Source: Octopus bimaculoides (lineage: Eukaryota). From it: a stretch of 64,000 bases of DNA. The position numbers and the translations under genes are program-made. The notes under the pieces were generated by a model that saw only the letters and a program-made list of their open reading frames with translations, had not been told where the DNA came from and did not search any database. Below are positions 3,843 through 52,415 of the stretch, one piece after another. The stretch covers positions 122,712,921 to 122,776,920 of the forward strand of contig NC_068984.1 in the NCBI RefSeq assembly GCF_001194135.2, given 5' to 3'. Numbering within the stretch: position 1 is the first letter of the stretch; every line of letters begins with the position of its first letter.

Positions 3843-5476
3843 ACTTATTCTATTGACCTTGAAAGGATAAAAGACAAAGTCAAACCATGGCAGCAGAATT
3901 TGAAATCAGGGTAAAGTGCCACTAAGTATTTTGGCCAGTGTGCTAATGATTCTGCCAGCTTTAATGCCTTGTGACATATGGCAGTTGTTTGACTGACAAC
4001 ATTGTCTGTTGTTTCTGCTTTTAGAAGCTGATATTACTATGCTTGCAGGGCAGTTGTTACTTGAGAAACCTTTATCATCATCATCATCATTTAATGTCTA
4101 TGTATCATACTGGCATGGGTTGAATAGTTTAATGTGTCCAACGACTGCTTTGGCATGGTTTTTACAGTATGAACTGGGTACATTTTTCATGCCACCCTCA
4201 CTATTGAGGTTGCCATGCAGTTCGCAGGATGACAAGAACCCTTTTCATTGGGGTTGTACATAGCTTCCTTGCAGTAACGATGGCAGCGGGTAAAAATCAA
4301 TTAACTTTGAAGAATAAACTAGAAGGAAGTCCTTCATTAATGAAGTGCAATCTAATGGAAGAGGACTTTTCTTAACATCCATTAAACAATCTCAAATTAT
4401 CAAAGCAAACTTGTTTCTTTATTGGCCTAGCACAATTATAACATCTGACATTTTTTTTTTAACAGTACCAGGTGCACTGCTTTTTGTATTTATTCATTTT
4501 CAATCAATGTATTTCATGTTGTGCTTACTTTCATTATTTAAATATTTGTACTATAGTTAACACGACAGAAATTTCCCTCTAAATAGGGTACTGTTGACAG
4601 AGCTTTCAGATTTCTCATGGCTTCAATAGATTATATTTTTTGTCTCTTGCTTGTTTCAGTTATTCGGCTGCAACAGCTATGCTTGGGCACCATTTAAAGG
4701 ATTTAGTTGGACAAATTCCCTAGTACTTATTTTTTTAAAGTCTGGTACTTAATCTATAAGTCTGTTTTGCCAAACCACTAAGTTACAGGGATGTAAACAA
4801 ACCAACACCGATTGTCAAATAGTGGGGTGGCAAACACAGATACACCCATACATAATGGAAGAAATCAACCCTAGTACTTATTCTTCAATTTGTGTCTCTT
4901 TTTCTATAGCTTGAGGCCTTTCCTGTCACCAACCAACACCTGTTTCCAACAAGACATATTTTCATAAAAGACAGGAAATGAATAGCACCACATGTATGAT
5001 GGTGATACTCACTTTCAACCATCAGGTTGCAGTCCACACATGCACACACACATTTCTTTCAGTTTCTACCAAATCTGACAGGAAAGGTACTTGCCTAAAG
5101 TGTCATACAATGAGATTGAACCCAAAACCATATGGTTGAGAAGGAAGAGAGCTACTTAATCACACAGCCAGGGTTAGATATAATAGGTGTTCCTATAATT
5201 TAAGACCGGGAATTATCTAGTGCCCCCAAAGACTGTAATCTTTTTAGTTGTGTGTTTTACGCATCACATGCTATAATTATGTAGAAAAGAAATCTTTTTT
5301 TTTAATGGGTAAAGATTTCTTTGCCAACTTTTCATTTCCATAATTTTTTACTTTCTTTAGAAAATTGTTTCAGAATTATATTCTAAACATCTGAGATTCT
5401 TCACAAGCATGTGTAACTTTTTTAAATCGGAAAACATTTTCAAAAAAAAAAAATAATAATAATAATAATAATAATA

Positions 5477-5863
5477 GGCGTAGGAGTGGCTGTGTGGTAA
5501 GTAGCTTGCTTACGAACCACATGGTTCCGGGTTCAGTCCCACTGTGTGGCACCTTGAGCAAGTGTCTTCTACTATAGCCTCGGGCCGACCAAAACCTTGT
5601 GAGTAGATTTGGTAGACGGAAACTGAAAGAAGCCTGTCGTATGTATATGTTTATATATGTGTTTGTGTGTCTGTGTTTGTCCCCTAAACATCGTTTGACA
5701 ACTGATGCTGGTGTTTACGTCCCCGTAACTTAGCGGTTCGGCAAAAAGAGACCGATAGAATAAGTACTTGGCTTACAAAAGAATAAGTCCTGGGGTCGAT
5801 GTGCTCGACTAAAGGCGGTGCTCCAGCATGGCCGCAGTCAAATGACTGAAACAAGTAAAGAGT
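5477..5863 (+). mobile_element. Full-length tRNA-derived, CORE-like SINE (little decayed)
   Basis: Pol III A box tggctgtgtgg and B box ggttcagtccc, CORE-like ggcaccttgagcaagtgtc, internal (TG)n, and tail ggcggtgctccagcatggccgcagtcaaatgactgaaacaagtaaagag. CpGs are retained. Confidence 0.9.
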
Positions 5864-5929
5864 AATAATAGGGAAATGAGTGCCCCTTCCTCTCTTCAGC
5901 TCACTTTTTATTTATTTATTTATTTTTAT

Positions 5930-6545
5930 TCAGAATCGTAATTTGCTATATTTGAAACATCCACATCCGACGAAACTACGGTATTTTACACACTACATAA
6001 TTCCAAGCCGTGTCCTATAGAAAGGCCGTGTGTGTAAAATAGTTTTTTTTTACTTTTGTGCTATTCTATTTATTTTGTTTTTTCCTTTCCCCCTGTCAAC
6101 AAGGTAAGAAAGGAACAGGGCGCATGATTTTCGCAGACATTCCATGCCTGCTAAAATAATACAGCTGATGTGTCCATGAACTTCTGTAAGTCAGTGATTG
6201 CAATTAAAACGTGGCTGTGGTCGGGAAATCGGTTGTCTCGCATTAATGATGACAGCAGTATCAAAACCACACAACCTGGCACTCGAGGGGCCAGGCGATG
6301 GTGTTAAGCCAGTGAGTGAGGGGCGTGTTTGATCCGCCTTCCCCTTTCTTTACTCAATTGCAGCACGGATGTACAGCACAAAAATGACGTGGTTTCCATA
6401 TGCCGTCAGAGTGACTGTACGTTAAATTGTTAATGCACCTGTAAGAGCCATTATCAACCTCTCGTCACTTTCCGCAATCAAAGTCATTAATATTATTATT
6501 GCATCATACAAGTGCGTGCGTGCACGGGCGTCTTTCACTCTCTCT
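5930..6545 (+). promoter_or_regulatory. CpG-retaining promoter-like region with a splice donor (AAG|GTAAGA, intron starting 6104)
   Basis: CpG density is high relative to the flanks. It contains a GC-box-like ggggcgtgt (~6319), a CRE/UPRE-like TGACGTGG (6385-6392), a donor at 6104 and a second GTAAGT at 6186. Confidence 0.45.
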
Positions 6546-7250
6546 CACTCACTCACTCACTCACTCACACAGACACTCTCTCACTCACTCACACACACAC
6601 ACTATATTCCAAACTTATTCATTCAGTATTTATAGCTAGATTATCTCCCCTAACCTCACCTCGTTTACCTCCCTTGTCACATAACCTTCTTGTATGTTAA
6701 TTAAAAATTAATTAGCAGAGATGCTGTCATACAAAATTCCTTGTACCAAATTACTATTTCGCAAAATATAGAACAGTTTTATTTTTCGGTTAATTTATTT
6801 GAATCCTCTTTAGCTCCTTGAAATACTACGTATTATGTTTTAAAGTTGTTTTTTTTTTCTCCAATTAAAATTCGTTTTTCTTTCTCCTGTATATCTACGT
6901 TTTCACTACAACATGAACATTTAATTCAATTATCGATCAGCTGCTACAATACTCCCGTGTTTTGAAGAGTTGTAAACCACTGGTTCTTCCCATGGTCATG
7001 AATCAAAATTATCACCTAGGTATGATTGTGTGAATAATATACATGATACGTATAGGCAGCAGTTAGATTTAGGGAATTTATGCATACTCATAATTGTGAA
7101 AGCATATATATATAATATATTAATATTTATTGCCAAACTAACGTGGCAGTCTGTAGAAATAGAACGAATACTACTGTTGATTAGCTCCGAGAGGCGATCG
7201 TCTCTAGCTAGCTATATGACGCACGAACTTGCGGAGGTCATCAACATTAT

Positions 7251-7608
7251 TCTTTTACTTGTTTCAGCCATTTGACTGCGGCCATGCCGGAGCACCGCCT
7301 TTGGTCATACAAATCGACCCCAGGACTTGCTCTTTGTAAGCCTGGTACTTATTGCAGCTTTCTATTTTGCCGAACCGCTAAGTTACGGTGGCATAAACAC
7401 ACCAGCATCGGTTGTCAAGCGATGGTGGTGGGACCAACACAGACACATATAACGGGTTTCTTTCAGTTTCCGTCTACCAAATCCACTCACAAGGCTTTGG
7501 TCGGCCCGAGGCTACAGTAGAAGACACTTGCCCAAGGTACCACGCAGTGGGACTGAACACGGAACCATGTGGTTGGGAAGCAAGCTTCTAACCACACAGC
7601 CACGCCTG
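7251..7608 (-). mobile_element. Full-length tRNA-derived, CORE-like SINE, inverted relative to the 5477 copy
   Basis: Reverse complement of the same family. Other copies or fragments lie at about 4630-5170, 8440-8670, 17606-18220, 24870-25075, 35640-35915, 37853-38199, 43531-43700 and 52190-52570. Confidence 0.9.
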
Positions 7609-7641
<33 letters not shown>

Positions 7642-8055
7642 CATCAAAAATTTTCCTCGGTCGGATAATTGTGTAAGTCAATGAATATAAACGTTTCCAT
7701 ATTGGCTGGCACAAAAATGCTACTTAAAATGTGTGTGCGAACGTATATTTATGAAATTGAATAAAGCTTAAAATTTATAGGTTTTAATGGGTATAGTCGA
7801 GTGAATGGGCATAATTTTATTTCTGTTAATTATTGACAACGAAGGAAGGAAACCCAATGTTGTCTCAGGTGGCATCTGAATGCCACGAAATAATGTTATG
7901 TGTCTGAGTTTATCGCCACCTTTTCTACATACCACCGCCTTTGCATTGACAGTAATAATACTTTAATTAGTGATAATCATTTTGATAATTTCCCATTTAG
8001 ACACAAGCCTTCCCATAATACGAGATACTACTACATAAACAATTTTTCTTTTTGT

Positions 8056-9079: not shown

Positions 9080-10611
9080 GTAGACATTCACAACTGAAAT
9101 GCCTTTGATTGTAGGTCTCCTATTCAAATGGGACTGACCTGAAACTAAACAACAACATATATTAAAGTGTATATTTAGCTTCCTTGTATAAGCAAGACTT
9201 CATCTGTAGCCTTATAAACAGTTCAGTTCAAGAGATAAAAGAGTTAAATGTCAAAGCTTTGTTGTTATTATCATTGTAATTTCCCAGTATAGTGGTTTCA
9301 TCTTTAGCATTTATTATCAATATTTACTGCATCTACACTGTGTTTCAGTCAGTCTGATATCTAATCAGTTATTAGATATTGAGCTGATTGAGACATATAA
9401 TAGGTGTAAAGGTTGTAAAGATGCAATCAATATAGTCAGTTAAATAATAATCTTCAAAAAAAAAAAATTAACATTAATTACTTCTTTCAGTTTAGAAATA
9501 ATAGTTTTAAGTCTCTGAGTGGTTGGCGTTAGGAAGGGCATCCAGCTGTAGAAACTCTGCCAAATCGGACTGGAGCCTGGTGTTGCCATCCGGTTTCACC
9601 AGTCCTCAGTCAAATCGTCCAACCCATGCTAGCATGGAAAGCGGACGTTAAACGATGATGATGATGAAGTCACCTTCTAGTTTGGAGCTCCATATATATC
9701 CAGGCACAAGACACCTGATGATTAGAATATGAACAAATTAAAACATAGTGTAGATGTAAATATTGTACATATCTACTCTAATGACCAGAAAATTATAATC
9801 TTAGTAAGACAGTATCTTTTGAGAAGATCTTTGAGATAACAATGTCTATAATGTTAAAATTGTAAAGACAAATTGCTCTGGTAATATTGGATAAAGTGAT
9901 GGTGTGGTGAACATGATAAAGGCACGAATAAAGAATGAGCAGGACTTGCTTTGAGTAAATGGTAAAATGAAAATATTAGTGATAAGCATATTATTATCCA
10001 TAAAACACCCTCAATAAATCATCATTATCAACAACAGCATCAGCAATAAATCAAGTATTATTAGAAGCTCCATGTTCCACGATTCCAAACGTTATCAGGA
10101 AGTGGATGAGTCATGGTGATGTCAGAAATTTGCAAGGCAGATGCCACAGTTCAAATTCTGATATTATGATGTTAGAATACGTAACACATTTATAAATGAT
10201 ATTGGAATTCACGACATATCTATAAACGAAAACATATGAAATAATATAGAAACATCATAGTGTAAATAAACAACACTGCACTACAGACATATGTTCAAGG
10301 TATTGTTACAAAGCAAATATTATAATAAATACGTATAGTTAGTTAATTCCTCTTAATTACATAACCTCAGTAATTGAAATATATGCAAGTAACCAAATTT
10401 GTATAGCAGTTAATAAATTTTAAGATTTCAAAATATTGTCAGTAAAATGGCATTATAGTAATAGGGTATTATATTTCAGTAAGCATTATATAATGAATTT
10501 ATTTTACAGTATATTTTCTGTATACATAATTTATTCCACACCCACTTCAAGCTATTTTTTTTAAATATGTATTGATATGGCAGTTTTTTTTGTTTTTTTT
10601 TTTTATCTTAG

Positions 10612-10926: not shown

Positions 10927-12081
10927 AGTAAAAATAATTTGACCTTATCCTCTTAGTTTTCCAAACATTCTGATCAACTCAAGCCTTGCTAGTTAACAAA
11001 ACTTAGTTAGATGAATAATTTGGAATGTTGTGGATAGCAAAACAAGCATGCATCATCATCATCATCAGTTCTTAATGTCTGTCTTTCATGCTGGCATGGG
11101 TTGTTACATGGTTTGCCAAGACCTAGTTAGCCCAAGAACTGCATCACACTCCCAGTATCTATTTTGGCATGGCTTCTACATCTGGATGCTCTTCCTAACT
11201 AACACCAACCACTTTACAGAGTGTACTGGGTGCTTTTTTATTTTTTTACATGGCACCAACACTTGTAAGGTCACCATGTAGCTTGCAACACCAAGACCCT
11301 CTTTGACTGAGTTGGTTTAAAGTAGAGAGGGAGGCAATTTCATGATAGTTAATGAGAGATTAAAATATGAAAGAAGGAGCTGGGACAGATTTCTTGCAGC
11401 AGAAGAGCTATATGGCTATTTGTGTAAAATAGCATCATTTTCTTAGAGAGATCCAATGGGCAAATGACTGGTTCTATGTAAATGGCCTTATCATATTTTA
11501 GCTTCATAAAATGTATAGCACATCTTGTTTTAGTGTCCGCTGCCTCTTTGACCTATGTATTAGATCTGACATATATGAAGATGAGCCTATTAGTATAGGC
11601 AGTACTATCTCCAGCATCATATAACTATAGCAGGTTCTGTTAGATTAATCTTCCAGAGTGATTGTTAAAGATATTGATGAGAAATGTTTTCTTTGTAATG
11701 TGCTCTCAGCCTTTAGAGAGTATATTTGAAATATTCTATCTACAATAAGTTTTGGTTGGTTTGTTTGTGGATGTACTTAACCGCTAAATCACCAGTTTAT
11801 GTACAATTATTATTGCAATTTTAGATTTTAATTTACCTTTCAGTAATGGTAGCCATATTGAGCTGATATCAGCTCTAGATATACTGAACTGCTTATTTGA
11901 TTTTTCTAAGTTTCTACTGTCTATTGTCTGTCTACAGAGTTAGATTTGAAGTAATAACTAGTTACATGTAACACTAAAGTTGTGTATATTATCAGTCTTT
12001 CTTCTCCAGTTCGAAAATGTGAAGTGAATATTGTGAAAATGTATTAATATTAACACACATAACACTAGTAATTTCATTTTT

Positions 12082-12175
12082 CTAATGTATTTTCCTTTTT
12101 TCTTTTTCTTACAGGTAAGTCATTTTATTTGCAAAATCTTCTCACTACATAGAATTCTTTTAATGCAAGGTAAGT
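12082..12175 (+). other. Recursive splice site (3'SS fused to 5'SS) with a 55-nt RS-exon candidate at 12115-12169
   Basis: Branch-like ctaat (12082-12086), a ~20-nt pure pyrimidine tract, ACAG|GTAAGT (12111-12120), and a second consensus donor CAAG|GTAAGT with GT at 12170. Confidence 0.65.
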
Positions 12176-14032
12176 TCAGAGTTTGGTAACTTATTGGTGT
12201 GACAGTTTCAGTGTTGCTTTTGAGTAATTTAGCTTCTGACATCCTGATATTTTTGATGGCTAGCATTTCTTGTGTTTGTTTTGCTTCTGATCAAGCAGAC
12301 CTATAATTAAAAACATTCCTACCAGGACCATCCCATGTTATTGCTAGACACAGTGTGCCCAAACCACATTAATCCAATGTATTCTGTTCTAAAATAGCAA
12401 GATATGTTCTGAGGGAGATTTATTGTTTCATACAGGTTAAATTGCTGCATAGAAACTCTGTCACGTGTCTTGTGTTGATTTCTTTATTTCTAATAGTTTC
12501 TTGCTGTAGAATTACCCTGATCTACCTTTTAGTGAAAAGTTAGCATTGTAAATAACATTTGAGTACCTGGCAGTAGGAGTGGTTGGTTGCTTAACAAATG
12601 ATTGGTTCAGCTGAAGACTCTTTGCATGGCTTACAAATCATTAATTTGTCAAGGTAAATCTCTTCAAGTATTTACCTGTTTTCAAACCCTTAACATAATT
12701 ACTGAGGTAGAGTTAGCACAACACAGTGCAACAGGGTTGTCAACCTTTAGAATTACAACTACAATCTACCCAACAAGTTTCCTACCAATTTCATTTCCCC
12801 AATTTCACACACAAAAGGCTGTAGAAAATTGTATTTGCCCACGATAACATGCAGTAAGAATGAACCCAGATCTTGTTGTTGCAAAACAAACATCTAAACT
12901 AGTCATGGACAGCTTGCAATCTGCAGGGTTTTTTGAACAGTATACCTAATGGAAAATTACCTTGAATTTTTTTTTGTAGTGAGCTATGTTTCATAAAGCC
13001 CACTTCTAGAAAAAGGTTCTCCATGTTTTTTCCAAGACATGTAAAAGATGCCCAGTACTCTCTGTAGGGTGGTTGGTATTAGGAAGGGAATCCAGCTGTA
13101 GAAACCAAGCCAAAACAGACTGGAGCTTGGTGCAGCTCTCTAGCTTACCAGCTCCAGTCAAACCATCTAAGCCATACCAGCATGAAAAATGGTGGTTGTG
13201 ATAGTTGTTGTGTGGAATGTCTTTGTGTTGCTGATAGAAGTAGTTGTGTTAATTAATTCCTGGTTAACCTAAATTGAGCAGACCAATGATCAAAGGTAGG
13301 CCAACCATGACTCTCTTGTCTTTTGTGGGATCTCTAGGACTATATTATCTGACATGTTTCTCCTGTTTTTAAAATGGAGAAGGATAACTTGAAAGTGATT
13401 TGGCTGCTATTTTTGGCAGGATGAATAGCTATGTTGGAGCTCCCTTGTTGCATTGCATTGTGTAATGATGTCTTTATGGTGGTGTTGGTGGTTGTTGCAG
13501 TGGACTATGTCTTGGTGATGGTTGTAGAAGCAGCTGCAGTATGCTACGTAGTGGTGGGGTAATAGTGATGGTAGCTGCTGCTGTTGCTTCTTCTTCTTCT
13601 TGTCTTTTTAAAAAGCTTCCTATTTGCCTTCTCAGGAATGTTGGCCTGAGTACCAACCTACCACTGCCACCGGAAGAGCACCCCTTGTTTAACTGGTCTG
13701 AAATAAACCAGAGGCTGACTGTTCAGTGATCCGCCTTCACCTGCTACCCCTCAACCTCAGCTCCCCCAGCATAAAAATGCTTATTATGTGGTGTGGATTT
13801 ATTGGGCCAAAACAGACCCGTGCCAGAAATATATCTGACCTTCTGTCATTAATTCACCTCTACTCTCTCATTAACCTGGCTCTCTTTCCTGTAATTATTT
13901 TCTATTTCTCTCTCTTTCTCTCTCTTTCTCTCTCTTTCTCTCTCTCTCTCCCCTTTATTTCTCTTTCTCATCCTCTTGCTCTCTTTTCATCTATTTCTTT
14001 CCCTTTCTCTCCCCTTATCTTTCTCCCCCTCC

Positions 14033-16562: not shown

Positions 16563-17854
16563 GAACTGCTGAAGTGTAACGAACTGGAAGTAATTGTCTG
16601 CCCTTCAGCTGTTCTGCTGCTGTCATCATCATCATCATCCTCATCACCACCATCATCATTGCCTACCATCAACATCATCATTACCTATTATCATTATCGT
16701 AATTGTCATCAATTAATGTATGCCGGGTTTTTTTTTGTTGTTTTTTTTAAGTAAAACTGATAACAGGTTGAATGGTTCTTGAAATGAGAACATTTCTAAT
16801 GTGTCTTAACTATTTTTCACCATCCCTTCTAAGTATTCCTAATAGCATTCTAAAGACTGGGCCTGTCTCACCCCCTAGGAACTACCCCACAGTCCTCCTT
16901 CTCTGTATGATGTATCATCATGTCACTATTTCATACCCAGAATACATCAGATATCAAGGTTTACAAAACATACTTTGCAACAGAAGATAATTTCATCCCT
17001 CTTTAATACCATATAACAACATATTGTGATTCACTTCCCACTAGGTATTACTCCCATGCAAAAATTAGCTCCTTGTACCTAATCATAAGGAATATGCATA
17101 AGTAGTAGTGGTAGTGGTGGTGTGATGGATGGTAAACCAATAGGGTGCCAGATAAAATACCTTATAGTGTTTCTGAGTTCAAATCCCATAAGGATCAACT
17201 TTGCTTTTCTCCTTCTAGGGTCAATAAAATATACTATCAACCAAGCCATGGGGAAGGGCAAACATCTGGTTCATAGCTTTATGGCTTTGGACAAACTAGA
17301 TTAGACATTAATGTGAGGCCCGGAGATCCCTTCAACCAGTTTGGCAACCTTTTGCATCCTCTTACAAACTCAGCTGTTCTGACTTCATCTTGCCACTGGG
17401 CACATTGTGCAAGAGCAAGAGAGTGTCTGATGAATGCCTAGCTTTTTCACTGTAAAAGACAAAAAAAAGCCCAACAAACCTTGCACTACTCTAGTAGTCA
17501 GTGTCAGATTGATGAACAAACTATCACATTGATTTGGAATATGCAAATCATTAACATGCCTTAGACCCTGTTCACAATTTTCAACATAAAGAGGAATTTC
17601 CTACTTATTTTATCTTGTTTCAATCATTAGACTGTGGCCATGCTGGGGCACCACCTTGAAGACTTTTTAGGTGAATGAATCGACCTCAGTACTTATCAAT
17701 TTTTAAAGCCTGGTACTTATTCTATTTGTCTCTTTTGCCAAACCACTAAATTAGGGGATGTAAACACACCACGCTGTTGTCAAGCAGTGGTGGGACACAC
17801 ACACACACACACACACATACACACACACATATGTGACAGGCTTCTTTCAGTTTC

Positions 17855-18775: not shown

Positions 18776-19673
18776 GTCACCCCATAAATAATGTGGGTTT
18801 TTTTTATACTTCTTTTATTTTTCAAAATTAAGGTAAAGTCCTTTCTTAATCTAAAATACACTCTCCTTCATTTTCTACAGTGCTCTTTCATCTATCTGGT
18901 AGACTTGCAAAGCACCTCTTCCAAAATTCACTTGTTCATGATGAAAAATTCTCCTCCAGTACTGTTCTGACCTTGTCTACAGAATTCATAACTTTTTCCA
19001 TCCAAATGATTTTGAAGACTGTGGAATAAATGATAATCAGATGGGGCAATGTCCAGCAAATATGGTGGCTGGGACATCGTTTCCATTCAAACTACTCCAG
19101 CCTTTGGAATGTCATCCTCACTGTATGTGGCTGAGCATTATCCTGATGGAAGAGCACCTTTCGTCTTGAAACCAGAGATGGTCATTTTTCTTTTAGCATT
19201 GACTTGAATGACCAAATCCAAGCTTCTCTAGTAGTTCCTCAACAGTACAATGGGATTTTGTTCCACCAGGGTTTACAGGATATCCTTGTTGAGCTCTACA
19301 GATCTAGGACAAGGCTCGTCTTCTAGGCTGTAGTTCCTGGCTCATAATTTCTGGAACCACCGTTGACACTGGTTTACACTTATTGTCGAATCTCCATATA
19401 CTGCATTAATATTCCTCACACTTTACGTTGTGTTGTTGCCTTTATCAAACTCATAAAGCAAAATATGCGGAATATGCTCTTTTGTCACTGCCATTATAGT
19501 TTTGGAAAAATAACTGTTAAAATCGAATTGCACTCTTCAAAACTTGCACTAAGAATAAGGCAAGGTAAAATTACTACCTGCTTTTATAGCAAGTTGATGC
19601 AGGTAGTTTATCCCATCCTCCTCTGACTTTTAGTTCATGCAATTGAAAAAAATACATTATTCATGGGATGACC

Positions 19674-21742: not shown

Positions 21743-21975
21743 NNNNNNNNNNNNNNNNNNNNNNNNNNNNNNNNNNNNNNNNNNNNNNNNNNNNNNNNNN
21801 NNNNNNNNNNNNNNNNNNNNNNNNNNNNNNNNNNNNNNNNNNNNNNNNNNNNNNNNNNNNNNNNNNNNNNNNNNNNNNNNNNNNNNNNNNNNNNNNNNNN
21901 NNNNNNNNNNNNNNNNNNNNNNNNNNNNNNNNNNNNNNNNNNNNNNNNNNNNNNNNNNNNNNNNNNNNNNNNNNN
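21743..21975. other. Assembly gap (N run)
   Basis: N characters. Other gaps are at 38777-38978, 39929-39938, 44480-44489 and 56321-56561. Confidence 1.
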
Positions 21976-22992: not shown

Positions 22993-25435
22993 TTTGTGTG
23001 TGTGTGTGTGTGTGTGTTGGGGTGGGTGGATGATAATCTTCTAGTTAAGATTCCATAAACCAAAGTCTGAAAGTTTTCAAATAAGAGAAGCACCACAAAT
23101 GGAAAATACCAAAAAGTGCTCAAAAGGTAGTTCATAATTGATGTATAGCTGCTACAGACCACACACTTGGGCTGTTGGCTGTTCTGAGTGAATTCACCTG
23201 CTCTAGGTTGTTCTCGCCCAACCACTTAAGTTGGCGCCAGTTTATTTATCAGCAGCCATCATAACAACGCTTTGATATGCGTCTACCACATACCATGTGT
23301 GTTTTAGTGCTGTACCATGTTGAAGTGGATGCAGATATTCCTATGGGTAATAACTATGAAAAGAAAACATCTATGTTTTATCAACATTACCAACAGTAAA
23401 GTTGTTGGAAAAACTCAACTAATGCTAGTGCATGTGTTTATGTATTTTGACTACCAGTTCTGAAAGAAGCCCAGCCGGAACTGAAACAGAAATAACTCTG
23501 TTAACTAGTCACCAAATAAAGAATATATATTTATAAATAGAGAGGCACACATTTGCACATAAACAGTATATATATTTATACACACAAACACACAAAAAAA
23601 TTCATTCGATAATGTTGATTGTTCATTTAGTTTCTCTGAACCATTTTTAAGCTTTGATTTCTTCAGAATTGATGAAGTATTGTTAATAAGTACCAGTCGA
23701 ACACTGGGGTCAATGTAATTGACTAACCCCTCCCCTAAAATTGCTGGCCTTGTGCCAAAATTTGAAGCCATTAATTAATTAATTGGATGATAGAGAGTTG
23801 AGGCTTCCGTTTCAAAGATATACATTCTCCTCTTTCATGAAAGCGGATCTTATGCTTAATTAGTTATGTTAGTATACACATGCTTATACATTTGAGTTTT
23901 TATTTAGGTATGCCTATGAATGTGTGAGTGTGGTTGCTGGTACATGTGTGTTTGTGTGTATATACTTATTCACCTGTTTGTTTCTATATCTATATGGAGC
24001 CCTATTTGTGGTTTTCTGTATGTATATGTGTACCTCCGTGTGTGTGTGTGTGTGTGTTATATGACAAAGTTCTCATGTTAATTGTTCATTTAATTAAATG
24101 CTCCTTCATTTCTAATTTACACCTTTAAATCATTTTATAACATTGTCACTGACATGTGTGTTGTGGCATATGATGTGGGGTAATATACTGTAATGCTGTG
24201 TAACATCGTGTGTAATACATAATCTAGCATGGTCATCTCTTATTTCAAATATCATACTTCATTTAGTATTTATTAGGTTCAACACCCATCTCAGTGTTAC
24301 AGTTACTAGATTGACATCTCCCACATTTATCTTTTCTCTCTCCCTCTCTCTCTCTCAGACAACCAAACATCATCCCCATTAACACCCTTGGTATTATCCC
24401 AAACCCCACCATCCCCACCACTATCATTCTTCTAAATCAGCTCTCCTTTCAAATGTCAACTACCCAGCGTTTACTCACTTCCTGCCCAGAAATCCTCTTT
24501 TGATTATATTAAGGATATCCTTGCAGGAATTCCTCACTTTGATGACACGCTCTCTGGAACACAGCAGATGAATCACGACATCTGTTTTGTGTTTCGGAGC
24601 CACCGGCATCTACTCTGGCAGACTAGTAAGCTATGCCACTGTCACATTACATGTCTGGTGGCTGCCTAGATGTGTGTTCGACTTAGATGATGCCTGTTTG
24701 TATGACTGATATATGACAGTTCAAGTAGAGGACCTGTAGTGAATATTGGAATTGTATGTTATTATTAACAGTAGGTAAATCCTGATCCAGTAAACATTTG
24801 ATTAAAAGCATTCCACCCATCTCCATCATTTGTTTTAGACCAGTGTTTCTCAACCATTTTTTACTATATATGCTTGTGTGTCTGTGTTTGTCTCACTAAC
24901 ATTGCTTGACAACTAATGCTGGTGTGTTTATGTCCCCATCACTTAGCGGTTCAGCAAGACAGACCGATAGAATAAGTATAGGCTTACAAAGAATAAGTCC
25001 TGGGGTCGATTTGCTCGACTAAAGGCAATGCTCCAGGATGGCCGCAGTCAAATGACTGAAACAAATAAAAGAATACACACACACACAAACACATTGTCGC
25101 ATTGTTGCATCGTCACATCGTACAGCATCAGGCTCACAATCATGAGGTTATGAGTTCAATTCCCAGACCAGGTTGTGTGTTGTGTTCTTGAGTAAGACAC
25201 TTTATTTCACGTTGCTCCAGTTCACTCAGCTGTAGAAATGAGTTGCATTGTCACTGGTGCCAAACTGTATCGGCCTTTGCCTTTCCCTTGGATAACATCA
25301 GTGACATGGAGAGTGGGAGGCTGGTATGTATGGACAGCTGCTAGTCTTCCATAAACAACCTTGCCTGGACTTGTTCCTTGGAGGGGAACTTTCTAGGTGC
25401 AATCCCATGGTCATTCATGATTGAATGGGGGTCTT

Positions 25436-26341: not shown

Positions 26342-27646
26342 TGAACAAAGCATTTGAGCGAGATCACTGCCAGCGCTGCTGGACTGATTCCTGTTCAGGT
26401 GACACGTGAAAACACCATTTGAGCGTGGCCACTGCCATTACCGCCAGACTGGCCCTCATTCCGGTGGCATGTAAAAGCACCCACTACATTCTCGGAGTGG
26501 TTGGCATTAGAAAGGGCATCCAGCTGTAGAAACTCTGCCAGATCAGATTGGAGCCTGGTGCAGCCATCTGGTTCGCCAGTCCTCAGTAAAATCGTCCAAC
26601 CCATGCTAGCATGAAAAGCAGACGTTAAACGATGATGATGATGATATATATATATGATAGTGAAGGTAAAGGATTTGTAGTAAGTAGGGAGGTGTAAAGT
26701 TGTATGAGAGTGAAAGAAGACCTTGTGACTGGTGGTTTACTGTATTTGTTTAGTACTTCTAATATTTTTTTTCTGTGCTATACATGAATTTGTTGTGGAG
26801 AAGAGCTACAGAGGAAGACTACATAGTGACATTCTTCTTTCCTCTTCCCAAAAACCATTTGTAAAAGTACGAAAAAGGAAAGAAAGAAAAGGAACCCTTT
26901 AATGTGAACTGGAAATATTTGCAATTAGATTAAGGTTACGAAATACTACTTGTTGTTCTTGTGAATCTTGATAGAAATCATTTAGTCTGGATGGTAATAA
27001 CTAATGTTGTAATAGCCGTTGTTGTTGTTGTTTTTGTTTGTGGAGGCGATGGTGCTGTCAATGTTGCTTTTATTGTTGCAGTACTTGTTATTGTAGTTGT
27101 TGTTGTTGTGATGTATTGATTATTTTCAAGTAGCCTGACTAATTATTGATTTATTTCTCATCTATCTATAGCCTTTTGTTCTACATGGAACTGTTGAGTG
27201 TGTGTGTGTGCGTGTGTGTGTGTATAATGGAGTTTGGGAGCTGTTGAATTGGTAGCCTTTCCGGAACCATATATTTACAGTTTATTGCAACCGAATTAAG
27301 GACCATTTAGGTAGATTAGCAAGGTCTAAATTTCAAGTTGAGCTTAGCACCTACTATTGTGTGTGTGCATGCACGTGCACATATTGATTCTATTCATTTC
27401 TGATCATTAAATTCAATATATATATCTAGGAATAAAGAATGTGGGTGTTAAGGAGATGGAAGAGTTATAACGAAAAGTGTGTGATCACCAAACCTATTTC
27501 AAGTAGGGTCTGTTCATCCAGCAATTCCTCTGTTACTTCCTTCTATAGGACATCCTGTATCGTAAATGAGATGATGTTCTTAACATATCATTTATTAATT
27601 CCTAACTTAACAGTTCAGCTATGTATATATGTGCTGTTTGTGTATG

Positions 27647-27695
<49 letters not shown>

Positions 27696-30257
27696 TTCGA
27701 AGCGCCGGAGTTTTAATGGTGGCAGCTGATGAAGGGGATGTTTCTATGTGGCCTGCTTGTTTGTTGCACCTTGTTTACCATTTTGTACTTGTTCTTTTGC
27801 CATGTCATGTACCCAGTTATGTATCTATATGTACATGTAGATGAACGTATATACATACATGTACATATATATGCATATACTCATATATTGTTTATATATA
27901 TATATATATATATATTGATAGATAGATAGGGAGGGAGGAGGGTTATACTACTTGTAACTAGTTACTACTCTGTCTCCCCCTTCCTCTCTCTCATCTGATC
28001 TGGTAAGGAAGATAATAAGATTTGAACTGTTTCTGTCCTCCTTCACAGTCAGCCAGACATTGTAGCAGTGATTCATCATTGTCTTAAGCAACAGGGTATC
28101 TGTAACTATGGTAATGATATATATATATATACATCTGCATACAGCAATATTGCCTTACGTAATGCTCTTTGTTCAGTTATATACGCTCTTTGATTATAGA
28201 TTAATTCAGGAGACTGAGTAGGAGGAGCACCTGTTCAATAATAATTTTTTTTTAATTAGATTCACACAGGTGTTGGCAGGACAGTTTATTGCTGACTAGT
28301 TTATTGGTATTATCTACTGGACAGACTACTATATGGGTGTCTATTGAACAAACAAACCATATATGTGTATGACTATAGGTCAGCTTTTAAAACCATTTTA
28401 GTTTGAGGAAGAAGAGTAATGCCTATAGCTTTCCCATGCTTTCCCATATAAATGAGGTTGATGTTAGCATAAATTTCTAAAGCTTGAATGATGGCTAATG
28501 CAGCATTGATACAGTGTTTATATAGTTTGTATGCAGTTTTACTTGTGTTGACAGCATAATGTCTGCTCTGCAGATTTGAAATTTTTCTAAATATTGCTGT
28601 TACCTAAATTTGGTTTATATTTCACATACTAGAGTCCTATCTAAGACTTTTGTATATAAACTATATATTTCTATTGTGTATGTAATACACAATATATACC
28701 TTGAAGATCACTGATGATGGTGCCACATAAAAAGGATCCGGTACATTTTGTATAGTGGTTGGCATAAGGAAGGGCATCCAGCTGTAGAAACCAAGCCAAA
28801 ACAGACTATGGAACCTAGTGCGACTCTTGACCTTGCCAGCTCCTGTCAGGCCAGCCAATCTATGCGAACATGGAAAGTAGATGTTAAATGATGATGATGA
28901 TACCATACGATATAAAACAATGCTGTTTCATTTACTGTCCTCATCTCTCAGATCTACAACATGGAAAAAAAAAGTAAAACCAAGACTGGTTTGTCAACTT
29001 GGGTGAACATTGCACTTAGCAAGGGGCTTCCTTCCTCTGGGTCTCCCTGAGTTAGAGGAGAGGAAAGACCGGCTAGGATATCTGAAAGAGGCAACCAGGT
29101 ACAAGGGCTGCACTCAAAAACCTTAATAAAACCTTGTAGACAGGTATTACTTTTCATCATAGCACAGAATCTTTGATTGGTGCTGACAGTTTTGTTGCCA
29201 TTGGTAACCAGGTAGCAATGGCTTACATGATTATCAATAGCAGATCATTTGTAGTCTTAACTAACATAATACAGTATATAGTACTAATATATACTTCATA
29301 CACTAAATTCACAACTGAAATTTTTCTATGTAAATTACCAATAGTATTCTTGTGTATAAAATTTACCCTTGTTTCTAAAATACACTGTACAGGGGGTCAA
29401 CATGACTTTGGTTAGCAAAAGGATTAATAATAATTCTTTGCATAAAGACTTTTAACACTTTCAGTTGATGTTCAGTTGAATAGTTTTGTTGTCCTAAGTT
29501 CAAACATGCTAGCAAATACAACTTGATAGAGTATGGAATCTTTGAGATGTCTTGCTCCAAAATGTAGATACTAGATATATGGAGAGCATATGTAGAAATA
29601 TAAAGTAAGAGGCATCAAAAAAGTTTTAGTATTATTTCTGATGTAAGACAATATTATTTTAATCATTTTTGCATGTAGTAGAGATAAACTCCAAGTTTGC
29701 TTCACTCTTATTAGACCTCTTTAGCCAAGCACTGATTTCAACATGCTTGTCAAATTGGTGATTAAAAAAATCACTGAGGTAGTTATTTAAATATGTGATT
29801 CACATGAAAACAGTAAAGTCAGTGTTGGCATATTTAATGTAGTGATTGAAAAAAAAATTACTAATTAGAAATACATATTTAATGAGGAAAAGATATAAGC
29901 TTAATGATAAGCATTATTTTATTTCAGTAAGTATGAGAGATAATTCCAGGTATGTTTTGGTTTTATGAGACCTCCTCAGCTTCACATAGATTTCACTGTC
30001 TTGTTAACAGTCTTATGTTACACCTATCAGATATGTTTACTTGCCTGAAAACACACACACACGTACATACATGAAAGAGTATTTTGTAATGTTTGGAGTG
30101 GAGAGATATTTCTTAAATCTCATAAAACTTAATATGAATTGTCATCATCATTGCCATTGAAGATTCTCTAAACAATTCTGTTATTCCATGCAACTAGTGT
30201 ACAGTGTTATACATTTACTTAGTGATTCTTTCATCGCTATTTTGGTAAAGGAAAGTG

Positions 30258-34902: not shown

Positions 34903-36649
34903 TGATGATAATTATGAAGAAGTACACTAATGAATAAGAAGAGAGATATTGATTAATGAATAAAACTTAACCTAAAAACTCAGCCAGTGGATTAGTTTAG
35001 AGGGAGAGAGCGAGATTAAATGCTTATTGATTAGAAACTTGACTGACTGTGCTTGTACTAACAACTCGAGTTTCTGACTCAAGCTTGCCAGCTTGACTGT
35101 CATCCATATGAAACCACATCACTGCTTCTTCTATTGGACCACCACCATATTGTATAAAAACCTGACTGAACAGTTATGAATTAACTTTGATTTCATATGA
35201 CCTATAACCAGGTGTCGTACACCAAAAATTCAAAGACATGAAGCAAGTAAATAAAGGCTGCATTTTAAAGACTCTGTTTGTGGATTTCATTTGGTGAAAA
35301 TCACTTATATATATTGGACAATGTGTTCTAGATTTTAGAAGGTTAAATGTGATTTAAAGTTCTTTCAGAATAAAACAAAACATCCCTTGAAATCTAATTT
35401 TTTTTTTTTTTTTTTTTACTTGTTTCAAAGTCTTGACATTTGGAAGGGCATCCAGCTGTAGAAAACCTTGCCAAAACTGACCTCGCCTATAAAAAGCACC
35501 CGGTCCACTCTGCTGAATGGTTTGTGTTAGGAAAGGCATCCAGCTGTAAAAACCCTGCCAAAACAGACACAGAAGTCTGGTGCAGGCTCCTGCCTGGCCA
35601 GCATGGAAGGCTGACATTAAATGACGATGATGATGCCTGGTATTTATTCTATCAGTCTCTTTTGCCAAACCGCAAAGTTATGGGGACATGAACGAAACAA
35701 CATTGGTTGTCAAATGGTGAGAGGAGAGACACACATATATATATGTATATAATGTAGGTTTCCACACAGTTTCCATCTACCATATTTACTCAAAAAGTAT
35801 TCATTGTCCTGGTGCTATAGCAGAAGATGCTTGCCCAAGATGCTGTGCAGTGGGACTGAACCCAAAGCCATGTAGTTTTAAAGCAAGCTTCTTAATCACA
35901 ATTATACCTGCACCTGATAAAAAATAATAAATTGTGGTGGGGTGATTTTAAAACTTCTGTATATTTTTTTTTTTAATGCAGGGTACATAAATTGACCATG
36001 AAAATCAACCAAATCAGGATTACTTTCCACAAGGTTTTGGGTTTTTAAAGCAAGTGAAACATAATATTTATTGCATGCTTTGTGCTGCAGACTCTTAAAA
36101 ATATGGATTCCAGCAAAAAAATGTTTACCTGCAAATGTTAAGTCGCTTGAAAAGTGACTTAAAAGTTCAGCTACTTAATATGCTTGAATGAAATGCCTCA
36201 AATTCTATTAGCAGCACATAATCAGACTAATACTGATTATTTGTGCTAAGCAGTTTCTTTTAGAACAACAAGAAGTTTAATTTCTAATTAAATATGTTAA
36301 TTTGCATATTTTGAAATCTCAGATATGCCCATTTGCTAATTATATATTCAAATTTTGAATATGTAAATTAGGCACAATAATTTCTCAATTTTTCAACTGG
36401 GTTACATTCCTCACATTTGAATAGAAGAATATTGTCTGTCAGTAGTAATAATGATCATCATCCTTTTTAACAACCAATTTTCTATAGCTGGATGTCTTTC
36501 CTGTCACCAACCTTTACTCGTTTCCAAGCAAGATATTATTTGTCTGTAGCTGGACATGTTTTCATTGAAGATTGGAAATGAAAGGACACCATTTGTATGA
36601 CAATGACACTCATTTACAGTTATCACATGATGTCAAAACATGAGTACAT

Positions 36650-37363: not shown

Positions 37364-38200
37364 TCCTACATCATTCACATCAGTCTGAGAGAGCCTGCAA
37401 ATGTCCTGGGCACTGACCTCCACCTGAATATCTTCAAAAATATAAGGGTACAAAGCTGTGCTACACACTGAGGCTATAAATTCATGATCTACCCTTGCAG
37501 TACTTAATATTTTTTATAACATAGCTATACAACAACCTTCTCCCCCCCCCCTCCGCCGGGGAATCACATGAATCTGATAAAACCTCACATTCTTAACACC
37601 ATTGTTTCACTCCTTTTCTCCCCCCTCTTTACACTCTGCTATGTGACACATTGTACAATGTTGTGTGATGGTGGCAGTGAATCAGGAACTGAATGGTGTT
37701 ATTGGTAATGGTTGTTCTTATTGTTTAGCCCAAGGACAGCTCAGTATGAACAAACCTGTATGTTAAGGAGTTTTGACTGTGACCATAGCAGCATTTTGTA
37801 TATTATATCATGCAGTAAATTACCCAATGTGTCCTTTATCTTCTTTTATCCTCTACTTGTTTCAGTCGTTGGACTACAGCCATGCTGAGGTACCACCTTG
37901 AATGGGTTTAGTTCAAGCAAATGAACTCCAGTACTTTTTTTTTTTTCAAGTCTTGTACTTACTCTTTCAATCTCTTTTCCCAAACCACAAAGTTACAGGG
38001 ACATAAACAAACTCACACCAGTTGCCAAGGGTGGGTGGGAGATAAACACAACACAAACAAACACTCATGATAGACTTCTTTTAGTTTCCATTTACCAAAT
38101 CTGCTCACAAGGATTTGGTCGGCCCAGGGCTACAGTAGAAGACACTTGCTGAAGGTACCACATAGTAAACTTCTTAACCACACTGCCATGCTTGTGCCTG

Positions 38201-38244
<44 letters not shown>

Positions 38245-41200
38245 TTTGTTTTAATCTTTAATATCACAGGTACAATTTGAAGGAAATTTGGCTATTATTT
38301 CAAACAAGCCATGTGACTTTAGACCAAGTGTTAATAGTGTTGATTGAATGCTGGTGGTGGTATTGCAAGCCTCTGTGGCTGAGGTTTTGGTGTTGTTCTC
38401 ATCACCTTTGTGATCAGTTGTCATCACCCACCTCAATTTCAGAGCATAACTGCTGGATTTTCTATCTCTTTCTACCCCCTATTTCTCTGCTACTTCTATA
38501 ATCTTCCCAAGGATTGCAAATCTACTGAGGGATTTTATCCATACATCTTTACCTTTTTTTTATGTTGGTATTGTTGCATATATCAGTGGTATGTGTGTGT
38601 GTTTGTGATTGTTTCTTCGTGGTCAGATGACAGAAACTGTTTAAAGTGCCAGGCTAAATGGTGTTGCATGATTGAGCTCCAACTCTTTAGATTCCTGTTT
38701 CAAATCTCATCAATGTCAACATTGTCTTTCATCCCTCTGGGATCAATATAAGTAACAGCCAAATAAAATTACCGGGNNNNNNNNNNNNNNNNNNNNNNNN
38801 NNNNNNNNNNNNNNNNNNNNNNNNNNNNNNNNNNNNNNNNNNNNNNNNNNNNNNNNNNNNNNNNNNNNNNNNNNNNNNNNNNNNNNNNNNNNNNNNNNNN
38901 NNNNNNNNNNNNNNNNNNNNNNNNNNNNNNNNNNNNNNNNNNNNNNNNNNNNNNNNNNNNNNNNNNNNNNNNNNNNNNCCTCCTCCTCCTCCTCCTCCTC
39001 GTCATCATCACTGTTGTTGTATTCTTTTCACCTTGGCTGGCTTCAAGCAAGCATTGACTTTTCTATTATTAATAACAAAGTCACATGATTTTAAGTCTTG
39101 TCTCCCCCTCCACTTCCTTCTTCCTCCTTCTCTCTTTTACTTCGTTTTCTTCTTCCTGTATTTACTGTCTATGACCGTCGCATCTTTGGTATAACATAGA
39201 CTGCAGTTGTGATCGATAATGGACCAGAACGGTTACATGGCACCGTACAGAACTAACACACAACAAAACTCTGGCCACAATGAACCAGTCACTGCAGCTT
39301 TTTTATTTATATATTTATTTCTTTGTTGTTGCTGATTCGATAGTTTTTAGGTTGAATTCATCAGCAGCAACAATTTAGTTTGGCTGGCATTTTGAGAAAG
39401 CAAGAAGTTCCAATCTAGCTAATGGATGAAGAAATACCTCCGGGACAGGTGTATGTTCGCAGAATAAAAAGCAAAACAAGATGGTGGTTGTTTAGCCTTA
39501 TTGAGCAGAAATGGGATTGAAATTCATAGCATTTATTTAGGCATAGTGTATCTAGGACTACATTACCAAATGTGGTCTTCCTTGTTGTTATTGTCTAGTG
39601 CCAGGTAGGTCCTGACCCAGTAATCCAAAATCAAAGACATTCTAGCAAATTACCATTTCATCTTTTAATTAAGCGTGGCATATCTAGGATCACATAGCTC
39701 AGTGTGTCTTTTTTCTCTTTTTTTTTTTTTTTTTTCATTAGATGGTAATGCTATTATGTGAGGGAAATTTGGCTATTATATCTAACAGTGGGTGGCCACA
39801 TTGTCTCAAAGAAATGGCTGAAGAGTGCCCAGTAACTTGATAGTCTTTGTGATTTGTTTTGTCCTGTTGTTCTTTAACTCCAGGTCATCCCTGATTCAGC
39901 AACCCTATGATTAAAGATATTCTAGTTANNNNNNNNNNCGAAGGGCAAGGATTGAGGGAAATTGGGTTGCTACTTACAGCTGGTTGAGCAACAATATAGA
40001 GATTTGTGCTGAAGGTATTTAGTTCTGACAGTGTTATTTTCATCCGTTATCCAGAGGACTTATAATCAAAGACATTCCGTTCATGACCTCTCCATTTAAT
40101 TTTCAGACATAATGTACTTAAAACTACATGTCCTTTTATGTTGATGCTGCTGATACAGGCATAAGATGGAAGCCTATTAGCCATGGTCACTTAATAACTC
40201 ACCTATTCTCCTCTACCCTTTTCTATCACACCCACCCATACATACTGTGCTTGTGTAGATACAGGGTAGAGATCACCAGTCTCTGTAAATATCAATAATC
40301 CTTCTCCTACACTACCCACTTTTCCTTAGACTTCTTTTTTTTGTACATTACTACCTTCCCCCATACTACTACTGATACTGCAGCTGTTATTGCTACCACT
40401 TCTATTGCTCCTACTTTTACCACTGCTACTAATACTACTTACCACTGCTACCACTACTATTAGTTCTACTACTTTTGAAAACTGCAGCTGTCATTGCTGC
40501 TTCTACTACTACTTCTACTTGTTAATGTTATATCAATTACTTATACTCCACTGGTTAGCAAAGCAGTTACAAAGCTCATCTTCAGACTGGGATCACTGCT
40601 TCCTTTCCCCTCGCTAGCACCACCACCTTTTTCCTTTTGAACATGATAAAAGACAGGTAATGATTTACTACTTGCTGGTGTCTAATAAAGAGAGTCGTTG
40701 GTACATAGATGGAGATCAAGCGTTTGCTCAGTCCAAAGCTTTTACTTTCCGGCAAGTAATCACCGACAATCTTTTATTTGGTGACCATCAGGGAGCATAA
40801 CCGACAATTTGTCATCTTGATATACTTGGTTGTTTGGCATTTGGTTATAATTGTTTTCTTTCCCTGGTGACAATAGTGAAGACGATGTTTTTGTTGTTAC
40901 TGTATAACCCCAGGTCAGTGCTGATCAAGCAGACCTATGATCAAAAGCTATTCCAGTCGCAATCATTTGACCACCTCCCATTTCTTTTCTGAGGCAAAGC
41001 ATGTGTACATGTGTGATGACCAGTGTCTATCATACATAAGTTAGTGAGCCCCTCCCCACAAAAAAAACCCTTTTAAATCAACTGTGAAGTTATAGTTATA
41101 TTGATAAGAAAAGTCATTATTAGTGTTACTGCCTATCTGCCACTAAAAATATTGGACATAATGGTACCTTGCAGTATTTCTTCTAGCTCTTTACATTCTG

Positions 41201-51675: not shown

Positions 51676-52379
51676 ATTTAGAGGGATATTACCTGAACAC
51701 TTAATAAAAATACCTGCCTCTGCTGTAAGCTGTATTTATACCACCACTACTACTACTACTACTACCTGAAAAATAGGTCTTCAGGTTCACACCTGCCACT
51801 TTCCTGGCAATAACATCTGTTAATTCCCCTCCAGGGACTTTCATTAACTGCAGTTAGATCTAATGAGATAAGAACAAGTTTGTTGTTTTGTTATTCCCAA
51901 AGTGAGAGTTGTCAGCCAGCTCAACTAACCAGTTAATACTATATGCTGCTTAATTCTCCCGCTCTAGTGTATTTACCCCTAAGCTATGTTATGTTATCCT
52001 CATTAAGATAGGTCCTAAATATAGCAAACTGTATGTCTTAAAATGTGGTACAGAGAGGTACCATATAGGAGACAAATAAAAACTGTGGTGATAACTGGCA
52101 GCAACATGCTGTGTGGCAGACCTACGCAGCTTGTGTCAGTTTAGAAAAGTGGTCATTGAATCATTGCAGTGGATTGCAAAATTGGTTATTCTTTCTTGTT
52201 TCAGTCATTTGATTGTGGCCATGCTGGAGCACCGCCTTTAGTCAAACAAATCAACCCCAAGACTTATTCTTTGTAAGCCTGGTGCTTATTCTGTCGGTCT
52301 CTTTTGCTGAACTGCTAAGCCATGGGGACGTAAACACATCAACATTGGTTGTCAAGCAATGGTGGGGTACCACACACAA

Positions 52380-52415
<36 letters not shown>

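What the first reader, a model, noticed from the sequence alone, without database searches (positions are those of the whole stretch)
12082..12175. Textbook recursive splice site (ratchet point) with RS-exon in a probable mollusc long intron
A branch-like ctaat, a long pure pyrimidine tract and ACAG are followed immediately by a perfect GTAAGT, and a second perfect donor lies 55 nt later. This is the architecture described for recursive splicing in long Drosophila introns and vertebrate neuronal genes, where a cryptic exon defines the site. It is the only such strong AG|GTAAGT I found in 64 kb. To my knowledge recursive splicing is little characterised in molluscs. A 17-nt microexon (12153-12169, after catag) is an alternative use.
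Basis: partly seen in the sequence, partly recalled or inferred. Interest (0 to 1): 0.75.

Follow-up and report, generated by a model that had tools for sequence, protein, structure and literature searches.

The report
Recursive-splice-like mini-exon in non-coding DNA
A 94-base stretch carries a perfect "acceptor fused to donor" splice signal followed 55 bases later by a second perfect donor, far beyond chance; this is the sequence signature of a recursive splice site, but no RNA, gene or cross-species evidence could be obtained to show that it is used that way.

Summary
TTCTAAT (branch A at 12085), a 21-nt uninterrupted pyrimidine tract (12090-12110) and CAG (12112-12114) run straight into GTAAGT (12115-12120). 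A second AAG|GTAAGT donor starts at 12170, 55 nt later. These are the only two AGGTAAGT on either strand of the 64 kb.

A juxtaposed 3'ss/5'ss score of 25.3 bits (next best 14.4) occurred in 1 of 900 simulated windows. The pair with the second donor never occurred. The segment is unique DNA, not a repeat copy or a tandem duplication.

It is therefore almost certainly a real splice-competent unit whose exon begins with a 5' splice site, i.e. an RS-exon by sequence definition.

Sequence alone cannot say whether it is a silent ratchet point in a long intron or an expressed non-coding or poison exon. The two donors have identical intronic hexamers. No coding exon, host gene, ncRNA or orthologous locus could be found. 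The mollusc assignment could not be checked.

The 55-nt segment is out of frame, has stops in two frames and matches no protein in 5.8 billion.

Verdict: real motif, interpretation plausible but unproven. If true it is a new member of a known kind. Moderate-low interest.

The parts
12080..12086 (+). Branch-point-like heptamer TTCTAAT (YNYTRAY); predicted branch A at 12085, 29 nt upstream of the AG
   Evidence: no AG dinucleotide between it and 12113
12090..12110 (+). 21-nt uninterrupted polypyrimidine tract (not a microsatellite by TRF)
12112..12114 (+). CAG 3' splice site; acceptor PWM 16.5 bits, above the 99.9th percentile (14.6) of all AG sites on the + strand
12115..12120 (+). GTAAGT immediately after the AG: the 5' splice site that would be regenerated once an upstream exon is joined here (ratchet point)
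12115..12169 (+). 55-nt candidate RS-exon. Length 3n+1. Frame 0 is open (VSHFICKIFSLHRILLMQ); frames 1 and 2 have stops. No protein match
12167..12175 (+). AAG|GTAAGT downstream donor (11.9 bits) that would define the 55-nt exon
11990..12009 (+). Second, weaker acceptor (tatcagtctttcttctccag|, 11.2 bits). It would give alternative non-coding exons 12010-12114 or 12010-12169. About 10% chance expectation, so optional

Best explanation
The element is a genuine, selected splice unit on the + strand: a 55-nt exon-like segment whose first six bases are themselves a consensus 5' splice site. It most likely acts as a recursive splice site (ratchet point with a cryptic RS-exon) inside a long intron.

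Inferred mechanism:

1. U2AF/U2 recognise the TTCTAAT branch site, the 21-nt pyrimidine tract and CAG at 12114.
2. U1 on AAG|GTAAGT at 12170 provides exon definition across 55 nt.
3. The upstream exon is ligated to 12115, which recreates exon-end|GTAAGT.
4. That regenerated donor is then paired with the distant real 3' splice site. The 55 nt and the remaining >=52 kb of intron are removed, leaving no trace in mRNA.
5. If the 12170 donor wins instead, a 55-nt out-of-frame (poison or UTR) exon is included.

Shown: the presence, exact geometry, uniqueness and non-randomness of the signals. Inferred: transcription of the + strand, intronic location, and every RNA-level step.
For: - Exact motif at the stated coordinates.
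- Only two AGGTAAGT in 128 kb of both strands, 55 nt apart.
- Juxtaposed-site score of 25.3 bits against 14.4 for the next best. That score or higher arose in 1 of 900 simulated windows and never together with the second donor.
- Exact-pattern matches of 1 against 0.00 expected.
- It is the strongest acceptor+donor pair in the window, 28.4 bits, expected 0.02 per window.
- Branch motif at -29 with an AG-free zone.
- Unique DNA, not an interspersed repeat and not a 55-nt duplication.
- The 55 nt is 3n+1 with stops in two frames, and no protein contains it. Cryptic RS-exons are described as short, poorly coding and out of frame (PMC8605326).
- No coding exon was detectable in the 12 kb upstream or the 52 kb downstream.
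- A T>A skew on the + strand persists after repeat masking, as is known for sense strands of introns (my own knowledge).
Against: - There is no RNA evidence of any kind.
- Host gene, strand of transcription and intron status are unverified.
- Conservation could not be tested.
- The downstream donor (AAG|GTAAGT) is as strong as the regenerated one can possibly be. Published work finds that cryptic RS-exons are skipped when the RS-5'ss outcompetes the downstream 5'ss (PMC6224609, PMC8605326). Balanced competition, and therefore inclusion, is just as plausible here.
- Roughly 3% of annotated human exon junctions regenerate a 5'ss (4,631 of about 135,000 junctions evaluated, PMC6224609). An ordinary expressed exon that begins with GT is therefore not rare.
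- The PWMs are generic, written from general knowledge, and not trained on this organism.
Confidence: 0.42

Rival explanations
1. An ordinary expressed exon (5'UTR, lncRNA, or alternative/poison cassette exon) at 12115-12169 that happens to begin with GTAAGT. It is spliced in normally through the 12170 donor. Recursive removal is absent or minor, as for 'annotated RS-exons'.
For: - Strong acceptor and strong donor 55 nt apart make the best exon-like pair in the window.
- The downstream donor is not weaker than the regenerated one. Under donor competition and EJC repression this favours inclusion (PMC6224609, PMC8605326).
- A CpG-rich island-like region with an exon-like pair at 5900-6103 lies 6 kb upstream and could supply a first exon.
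Against: - No protein in 5.8 billion clusters, nor among 1.84 billion representatives, contains its translation.
- Its length is 3n+1, with stops in two frames. It can therefore only be non-coding or a poison exon.
- A start with the full GTAAGT consensus is expected for only about 3e-4 of exons by composition (inference from base frequencies).
Confidence: 0.35
2. The end of a longer non-coding exon (12010-12114) with two tandem alternative 5' splice sites at 12115 and 12170. On this reading the pyrimidine tract plus AG lying inside that exon is coincidental.
For: There is an acceptor at 12009|12010 of 11.2 bits, above the 99th percentile. The pairs 12010-12114 (24.0 bits) and 12010-12169 (23.0 bits) rank 3rd and 4th in the window.
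Against: - An acceptor this good within 250 nt is expected about 10% of the time (inference percentiles).
- Pairs of 24 bits or more are expected 0.8 times per window.
- This reading leaves the 16.5-bit acceptor, which abuts the donor exactly, unexplained. Such an acceptor has a probability of about 3e-7 per nt under i.i.d. composition.
Confidence: 0.08
3. A non-functional coincidence, or a relic. Examples are a fragment of a duplicated gene or a decayed element in intergenic or antisense DNA that is never spliced.
For: No gene, exon, ncRNA or homologue could be linked to the window. Low-complexity T/C-rich DNA is abundant here and inflates acceptor-like scores: TRF masks about 10% of the window, and the other top acceptors are TC microsatellites.
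Against: - The composite is expected less than once even in a 3-Gb genome. The juxtaposed site alone is expected at about 1 to about 50 per genome (my extrapolation from 1 in 900 windows). A second donor within 25-120 nt multiplies that by about 2e-3.
- The tract is not a microsatellite.
- The + strand shows a transcription-like T>A skew.
Confidence: 0.1

Closest known systems
Drosophila intronic ratchet points with cryptic RS-exons (Ubx, kuz, Bx, chinmo; Duff 2015, Joseph 2018/2021, Pai 2018)
   Same: - (Y)n-CAG|GTAAGT juxtaposed motif.
- Short exon-like segment of about 50 nt closed by a second 5'ss less than 100 nt downstream.
- Segment out of frame and non-coding.
- Surrounded by tens of kb with no exon.
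   Different: In flies the ratchet-point donor is usually stronger than the RS-exon donor; here the two are identical hexamers. Fly sites are defined by saw-tooth coverage, intermediate junctions and deep conservation, none of which is available here. The organism is unknown and certainly not a fly.
Vertebrate RS-exons (cryptic in long neuronal genes such as CADM2; Sibley 2015) and annotated RS-exons repressed by the EJC (Blazquez 2018, PMC6224609)
   Same: [quoted passage not shown] The outcome is decided by competition with the exon's own 5'ss. Inclusion would introduce a frameshift or stop.
   Different: Vertebrate cryptic RS sites lie in very long first introns of known genes. Annotated RS-exons are present in mRNA and usually coding. 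Here neither the gene nor inclusion is known, and no protein contains the segment.
Poison (NMD-inducing) cassette exons
   Same: Short, 3n+1, stop codons in two frames, strong splice sites in otherwise non-coding intron.
   Different: Poison exons need not start with a 5'ss consensus and are typically highly conserved. Conservation could not be tested here.

Membership tests
Recursive splice site / ratchet point with cryptic RS-exon | [quoted passage not shown] | tested here: met
   TTTCTTTTTCTTACAG|GTAAGT, 25.3 bits, the only exact pattern match (0.00 expected)
Recursive splice site / ratchet point with cryptic RS-exon | A further 5' splice site less than 100 nt downstream that defines a short RS-exon | tested here: met
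   AAG|GTAAGT at +55 nt, 11.9 bits
Recursive splice site / ratchet point with cryptic RS-exon | RS-exon content non-coding or out of frame | tested here: met
   55 nt = 3n+1, stops in 2 frames; no protein match
Recursive splice site / ratchet point with cryptic RS-exon | Lies in the sense orientation within a long intron of a transcribed gene | tested here: inconclusive
   No coding exon was detectable in 64 kb, and there is a T>A skew on +. But no gene or annotation could be retrieved.
Recursive splice site / ratchet point with cryptic RS-exon | Regenerated RS-5'ss outcompetes the RS-exon's own 5'ss | tested here: inconclusive
   The intronic hexamers are identical and positions +7/+8 are mismatched to U1 in both. 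The exonic -3..-1 of the regenerated site depend on an unknown upstream exon.
Recursive splice site / ratchet point with cryptic RS-exon | Splicing intermediates: upstream-exon|GTAAGT junction reads, saw-tooth intron coverage, segment lariats | not testable with these tools
   No RNA-seq or read data are accessible
Recursive splice site / ratchet point with cryptic RS-exon | Evolutionary conservation of the SA|SD motif above flanking intron | not testable with these tools
   There is no eukaryotic DNA collection. A 24-mer scan of metagenome contigs gave 0. Exact and homologous ORF look-ups were empty.
Expressed (annotated) RS-exon | [quoted passage not shown] | tested here: met
   It begins with GTAAGT. 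This is a sequence-level criterion only.
Expressed (annotated) RS-exon | Present in mature transcripts or annotated gene models | tested here: inconclusive
   It is not part of any predicted protein. Non-coding inclusion cannot be examined.

The most novel reading that the evidence does not exclude
The site is a working zero-nucleotide recursive splice site, defined through a cryptic 55-nt RS-exon, in a very long intron of a non-model animal. No paper in the library searched here pairs 'recursive splicing' with mollusc, and the one cephalopod hit holds each term only once. It would show that the exon-definition route to recursive splicing extends to a third major bilaterian branch, and it would give a sequence rule for finding more such sites in giant-intron genomes.
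Probability: 0.35. Interest if true: 0.5.

Novelty: new member of a known kind. Interest (0 to 1): 0.35.

Why it matters
Recursive splicing has been characterised in flies and vertebrates. If it operates here, the same acceptor|donor plus downstream-donor rule would apply in another lineage with very long introns, and this motif could seed a genome-wide search. A single predicted site without RNA support does not change understanding on its own. It is a well-founded candidate, not a discovery.

Tried and rejected
**Repeat or duplication origin**
- Interspersed-repeat origin: self-BLAST of 11501-12800 finds nothing but itself. The flanking SINE-like copies stop at 11.24 kb and 13.04 kb. Rejected.
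- 55-nt tandem duplication creating the two donors: offset-55 identity is 23/62, p=0.08, and only a 21-nt T-rich local match exists. TRF finds nothing. Rejected.

**Search for a host gene or coding exon**
- Pfam on 331 stop-free ORFs of 48 aa or more gave only chance-level hits.
- Splice-pair scans and amino-acid-composition scoring returned only microsatellite translations.

**Is the 55 nt a known coding exon?**
- The ORF through the site was searched against 5.8 billion proteins at E<=10 with no hit.
- The same ORF against 1.84 billion representatives gave 0 hits.

**Orthologous or identical DNA**
- Exact look-ups of 12 window ORFs were not on record.
- A 24-mer across the site gave 0 in metagenome contigs.

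**Taxon**
- A SINE-like ORF had no protein hit.
- The mariner remnant hits only unrelated eukaryotic contigs in metagenomes, at 82% nt identity over the element only. The first of the two fetched contigs read has CpG o/e 1.59 against 0.24 here. This is uninformative.
- Two papers checked for octopus CpG depletion gave nothing usable.

**Other**
- Rfam and tRNA scans for an intronic ncRNA that would fix the strand found none.
- The 17-nt microexon reading was rejected as secondary, because its acceptor scores below 3 bits.

Full report
**What is there**

On the + strand the sequence reads ...tttTTCTAATgta-TTTTCCTTTTTTCTTTTTCTT-ACAG|GTAAGTcattttatttgcaaaatcttctcactacatagaattcttttaatgcAAG|GTAAGTtcag.
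- ctaat is at 12082-86, inside TTCTAAT, which fits the YNYTRAY branch consensus. Its branch A at 12085 lies 29 nt from the AG, and no AG intervenes.
- 12090-12110 is 21 consecutive pyrimidines and is not called a tandem repeat.
- CAG ends at 12114. GTAAGT occupies 12115-20. A second AAG|GTAAGT donor begins at 12170, 55 nt after the first.

**Is it more than chance?**

AGGTAAGT occurs twice in the 128 kb of both strands, and both copies are here.
- The exact pattern Y12-N-YAG|GTRAGT has one match against 0.00 expected in 100 dinucleotide-preserving shuffles.
- AGGTAAGT-N20-50-AGGTAAGT likewise has one match against 0.00 expected.
- I wrote generic metazoan splice-site PWMs from general knowledge; they are not trained on this organism. 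With them the juxtaposed acceptor+donor score is 25.3 bits, against 14.4 for the runner-up on either strand.
- The acceptor (16.5 bits) is above the 99.9th percentile of AG sites, and both donors are above the 99.9th percentile of GT sites.
- In 900 windows simulated with Markov orders 1, 3 and 5, a juxtaposed score of 25.3 or more arose once. It never arose together with a strong donor 25-120 nt downstream.
- Under i.i.d. composition the probability is about 3e-10 per nt.
- An acceptor+donor pair totalling 28.4 bits or more is expected 0.02 times per window. The requirement that the exon start with GTAAGT is an independent factor of order 1e-4.
- Extrapolated, the full composite is expected less than once in a 3-Gb genome. 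This is my inference.

It is not a repeat copy. The 1.3 kb around it is unique in the window and lies between two old SINE-like copies at 11.08-11.23 and 13.05-13.19 kb. It is also not the product of a 55-nt duplication.

I conclude that the signals are real and most probably maintained by selection for splicing.

**What surrounds it**

The window is 36% G+C, with N gaps. About 10% of it is masked as tandem repeats. It carries many copies of two SINE-like families and an internally deleted mariner remnant.

I found no protein-coding exon.
- 331 stop-free ORFs of 48 aa or more gave only chance-level Pfam hits.
- Splice-pair scans and amino-acid-composition scoring returned only microsatellite translations and junk.
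- Rfam and tRNA scans were empty.

So at least 12 kb upstream and 52 kb downstream of the site are non-coding. That is compatible with a very long intron and equally with intergenic DNA.

Two indirect hints favour transcription of the + strand.
- A T>A skew of +0.05 persists after repeat masking in 14 of 16 4-kb bins. From my own knowledge, this is the direction seen on the sense strand of animal introns.
- Ten of the eleven best exon-like pairs lie on +, though this partly reflects the same pyrimidine bias.

A 2.5-kb CpG-rich patch lies at 5.2-8.0 kb, with o/e 0.8-0.93 against 0.24 overall. It contains the second-best exon-like pair, 5900-6103 ending AAG|GTAAGA. It might be a promoter with a first exon 6 kb upstream. 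This is a lead only.

**What the 55 nt could encode**

Frame 0 is open (VSHFICKIFSLHRILLMQ), but the length is 3n+1 and the other frames have stops. The ORF through the site found nothing at E<=10 among 5.8 billion proteins, and nothing among 1.84 billion representatives read in full by HMMER. A non-coding or poison exon remains possible.

**Mechanism**

The geometry is the published one.
- A ratchet point is a tandem acceptor|donor with a short (~50 nt), poorly conserved, generally out-of-frame cryptic RS-exon closed by a downstream donor. The exon is recognised first. Then either the ratchet-point donor or the RS-exon donor is used (PMC8605326).
- Most Drosophila RS sites have an additional 5'ss less than 100 nt downstream. 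Efficient recursion of cryptic RS-exons needs an RS-5'ss that outcompetes it (PMC6224609).
- Recursive sites are juxtaposed 3'/5' motifs around AG/GT in very long fly introns and are about twice as conserved as control AGGT (PMC6110457).

Here the two donors share the same GTAAGT, and neither pairs with U1 at +7/+8. The downstream one has AAG in the exon, and the regenerated one would take its -3..-1 from an unknown upstream exon. Competition is thus predicted to be balanced. This is the main reason I cannot prefer silent recursion strongly over an expressed or alternative RS-exon.

A weaker acceptor at 12009|12010 (11.2 bits) allows a third reading: a non-coding exon 12010-12114 with tandem donors. 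It is not statistically compelling.

**What could not be done**

No RNA data are available, and no eukaryotic genome collection is on hand.
- Exact look-ups of 12 window ORFs were not on record.
- A 24-mer across the site is absent from metagenome contigs.
- The taxon could not be established. A SINE-like ORF has no protein relatives. The mariner remnant matches only unrelated eukaryotic contigs in metagenomes; the one I read has a quite different CpG content.
- The held literature has no paper combining recursive splicing with mollusc, and one incidental paper for cephalopod.

**Verdict**

- It is a splice-competent RS-exon unit by sequence definition (about 0.85 that it is a real splice element).
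- I put a silent recursive site at 0.42, an expressed non-coding or poison exon at 0.35, an exon with tandem donors at 0.08, and a non-functional relic or coincidence at 0.10.
- If true, it is a new member of a known kind.
- Interest is moderate-low, because it is a single motif-based candidate with no expression, gene or conservation evidence.

Noticed in passing
window 5200-8000: CpG-rich, island-like patch (24-35 CpG per kb, o/e 0.8-0.93) in a window whose overall CpG o/e is 0.24. It holds the window's second-best exon-like pair on the + strand, 5900-6103 (acceptor 13.8 bits, donor AAG|GTAAGA 10.3 bits), 6 kb upstream of the site. It could be a promoter with a first exon, or a younger insertion.
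   Followed up: partly
window 5449-5866 and 7246-7639: Two copies of a SINE-like family in inverted orientation (82% identity over about 420 nt) bracket the CpG-rich core. At least 10 further, more diverged copies lie elsewhere, for example at 52186-52564, 24860-25069, 37851-38166 and 17609-17854.
   Followed up: partly
window 11084-11230 (-) and 13051-13187 (+): The splice element sits in about 1.8 kb of unique DNA between two old (75% identity) inverted copies of another SINE-like family; its ORF translations carry motifs such as FYSWMPFL (1364-1513, 9443-9595). Other copies are at 1400-1548, 9519-9640, 26468-26617, 28725-28876, 35438-35585 and 63860-64000. Inverted repeats flanking an exon are the arrangement known to favour back-splicing. 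This was not examined.
   Followed up: no
window 18880-19500 (-): Internally deleted, stop-ridden mariner/Mos1-type transposase remnant (HTH_48 and Transposase_1 relatives). The nearest DNA match is 82% identical in eukaryotic contigs from JGI metagenomes 3300002931 and 3300002938; the contig I read has a quite different CpG content. This suggests a horizontally spread element.
   Followed up: partly
window 1-64000: Strong global CpG depletion (o/e 0.24) and a consistent T>A skew on the + strand (+0.05 after masking, 14 of 16 bins). Both are compatible with a germline-methylated region transcribed on the + strand. Neither was calibrated for this unknown organism.
   Followed up: partly
window 12009|12010: A second good acceptor (tatcagtctttcttctccag|, 11.2 bits) lies 105 nt upstream of the first GTAAGT, so two acceptors and two donors fall within 165 nt. 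All three frames of 12010-12114 are closed.
   Followed up: yes
window 6104 and 42102 (+): These are the next-best juxtaposed acceptor|donor sites (14.2 and 14.4 bits). They are within the range of simulated maxima (mean 15-17) and therefore not significant.
   Followed up: yes
window 21743-21975, 38777-38978, 39929-39938, 44480-44489, 56321-56561: Assembly gaps (runs of N), mostly next to dinucleotide microsatellites. About 10% of the window is tandem repeat by TRF.
   Followed up: no
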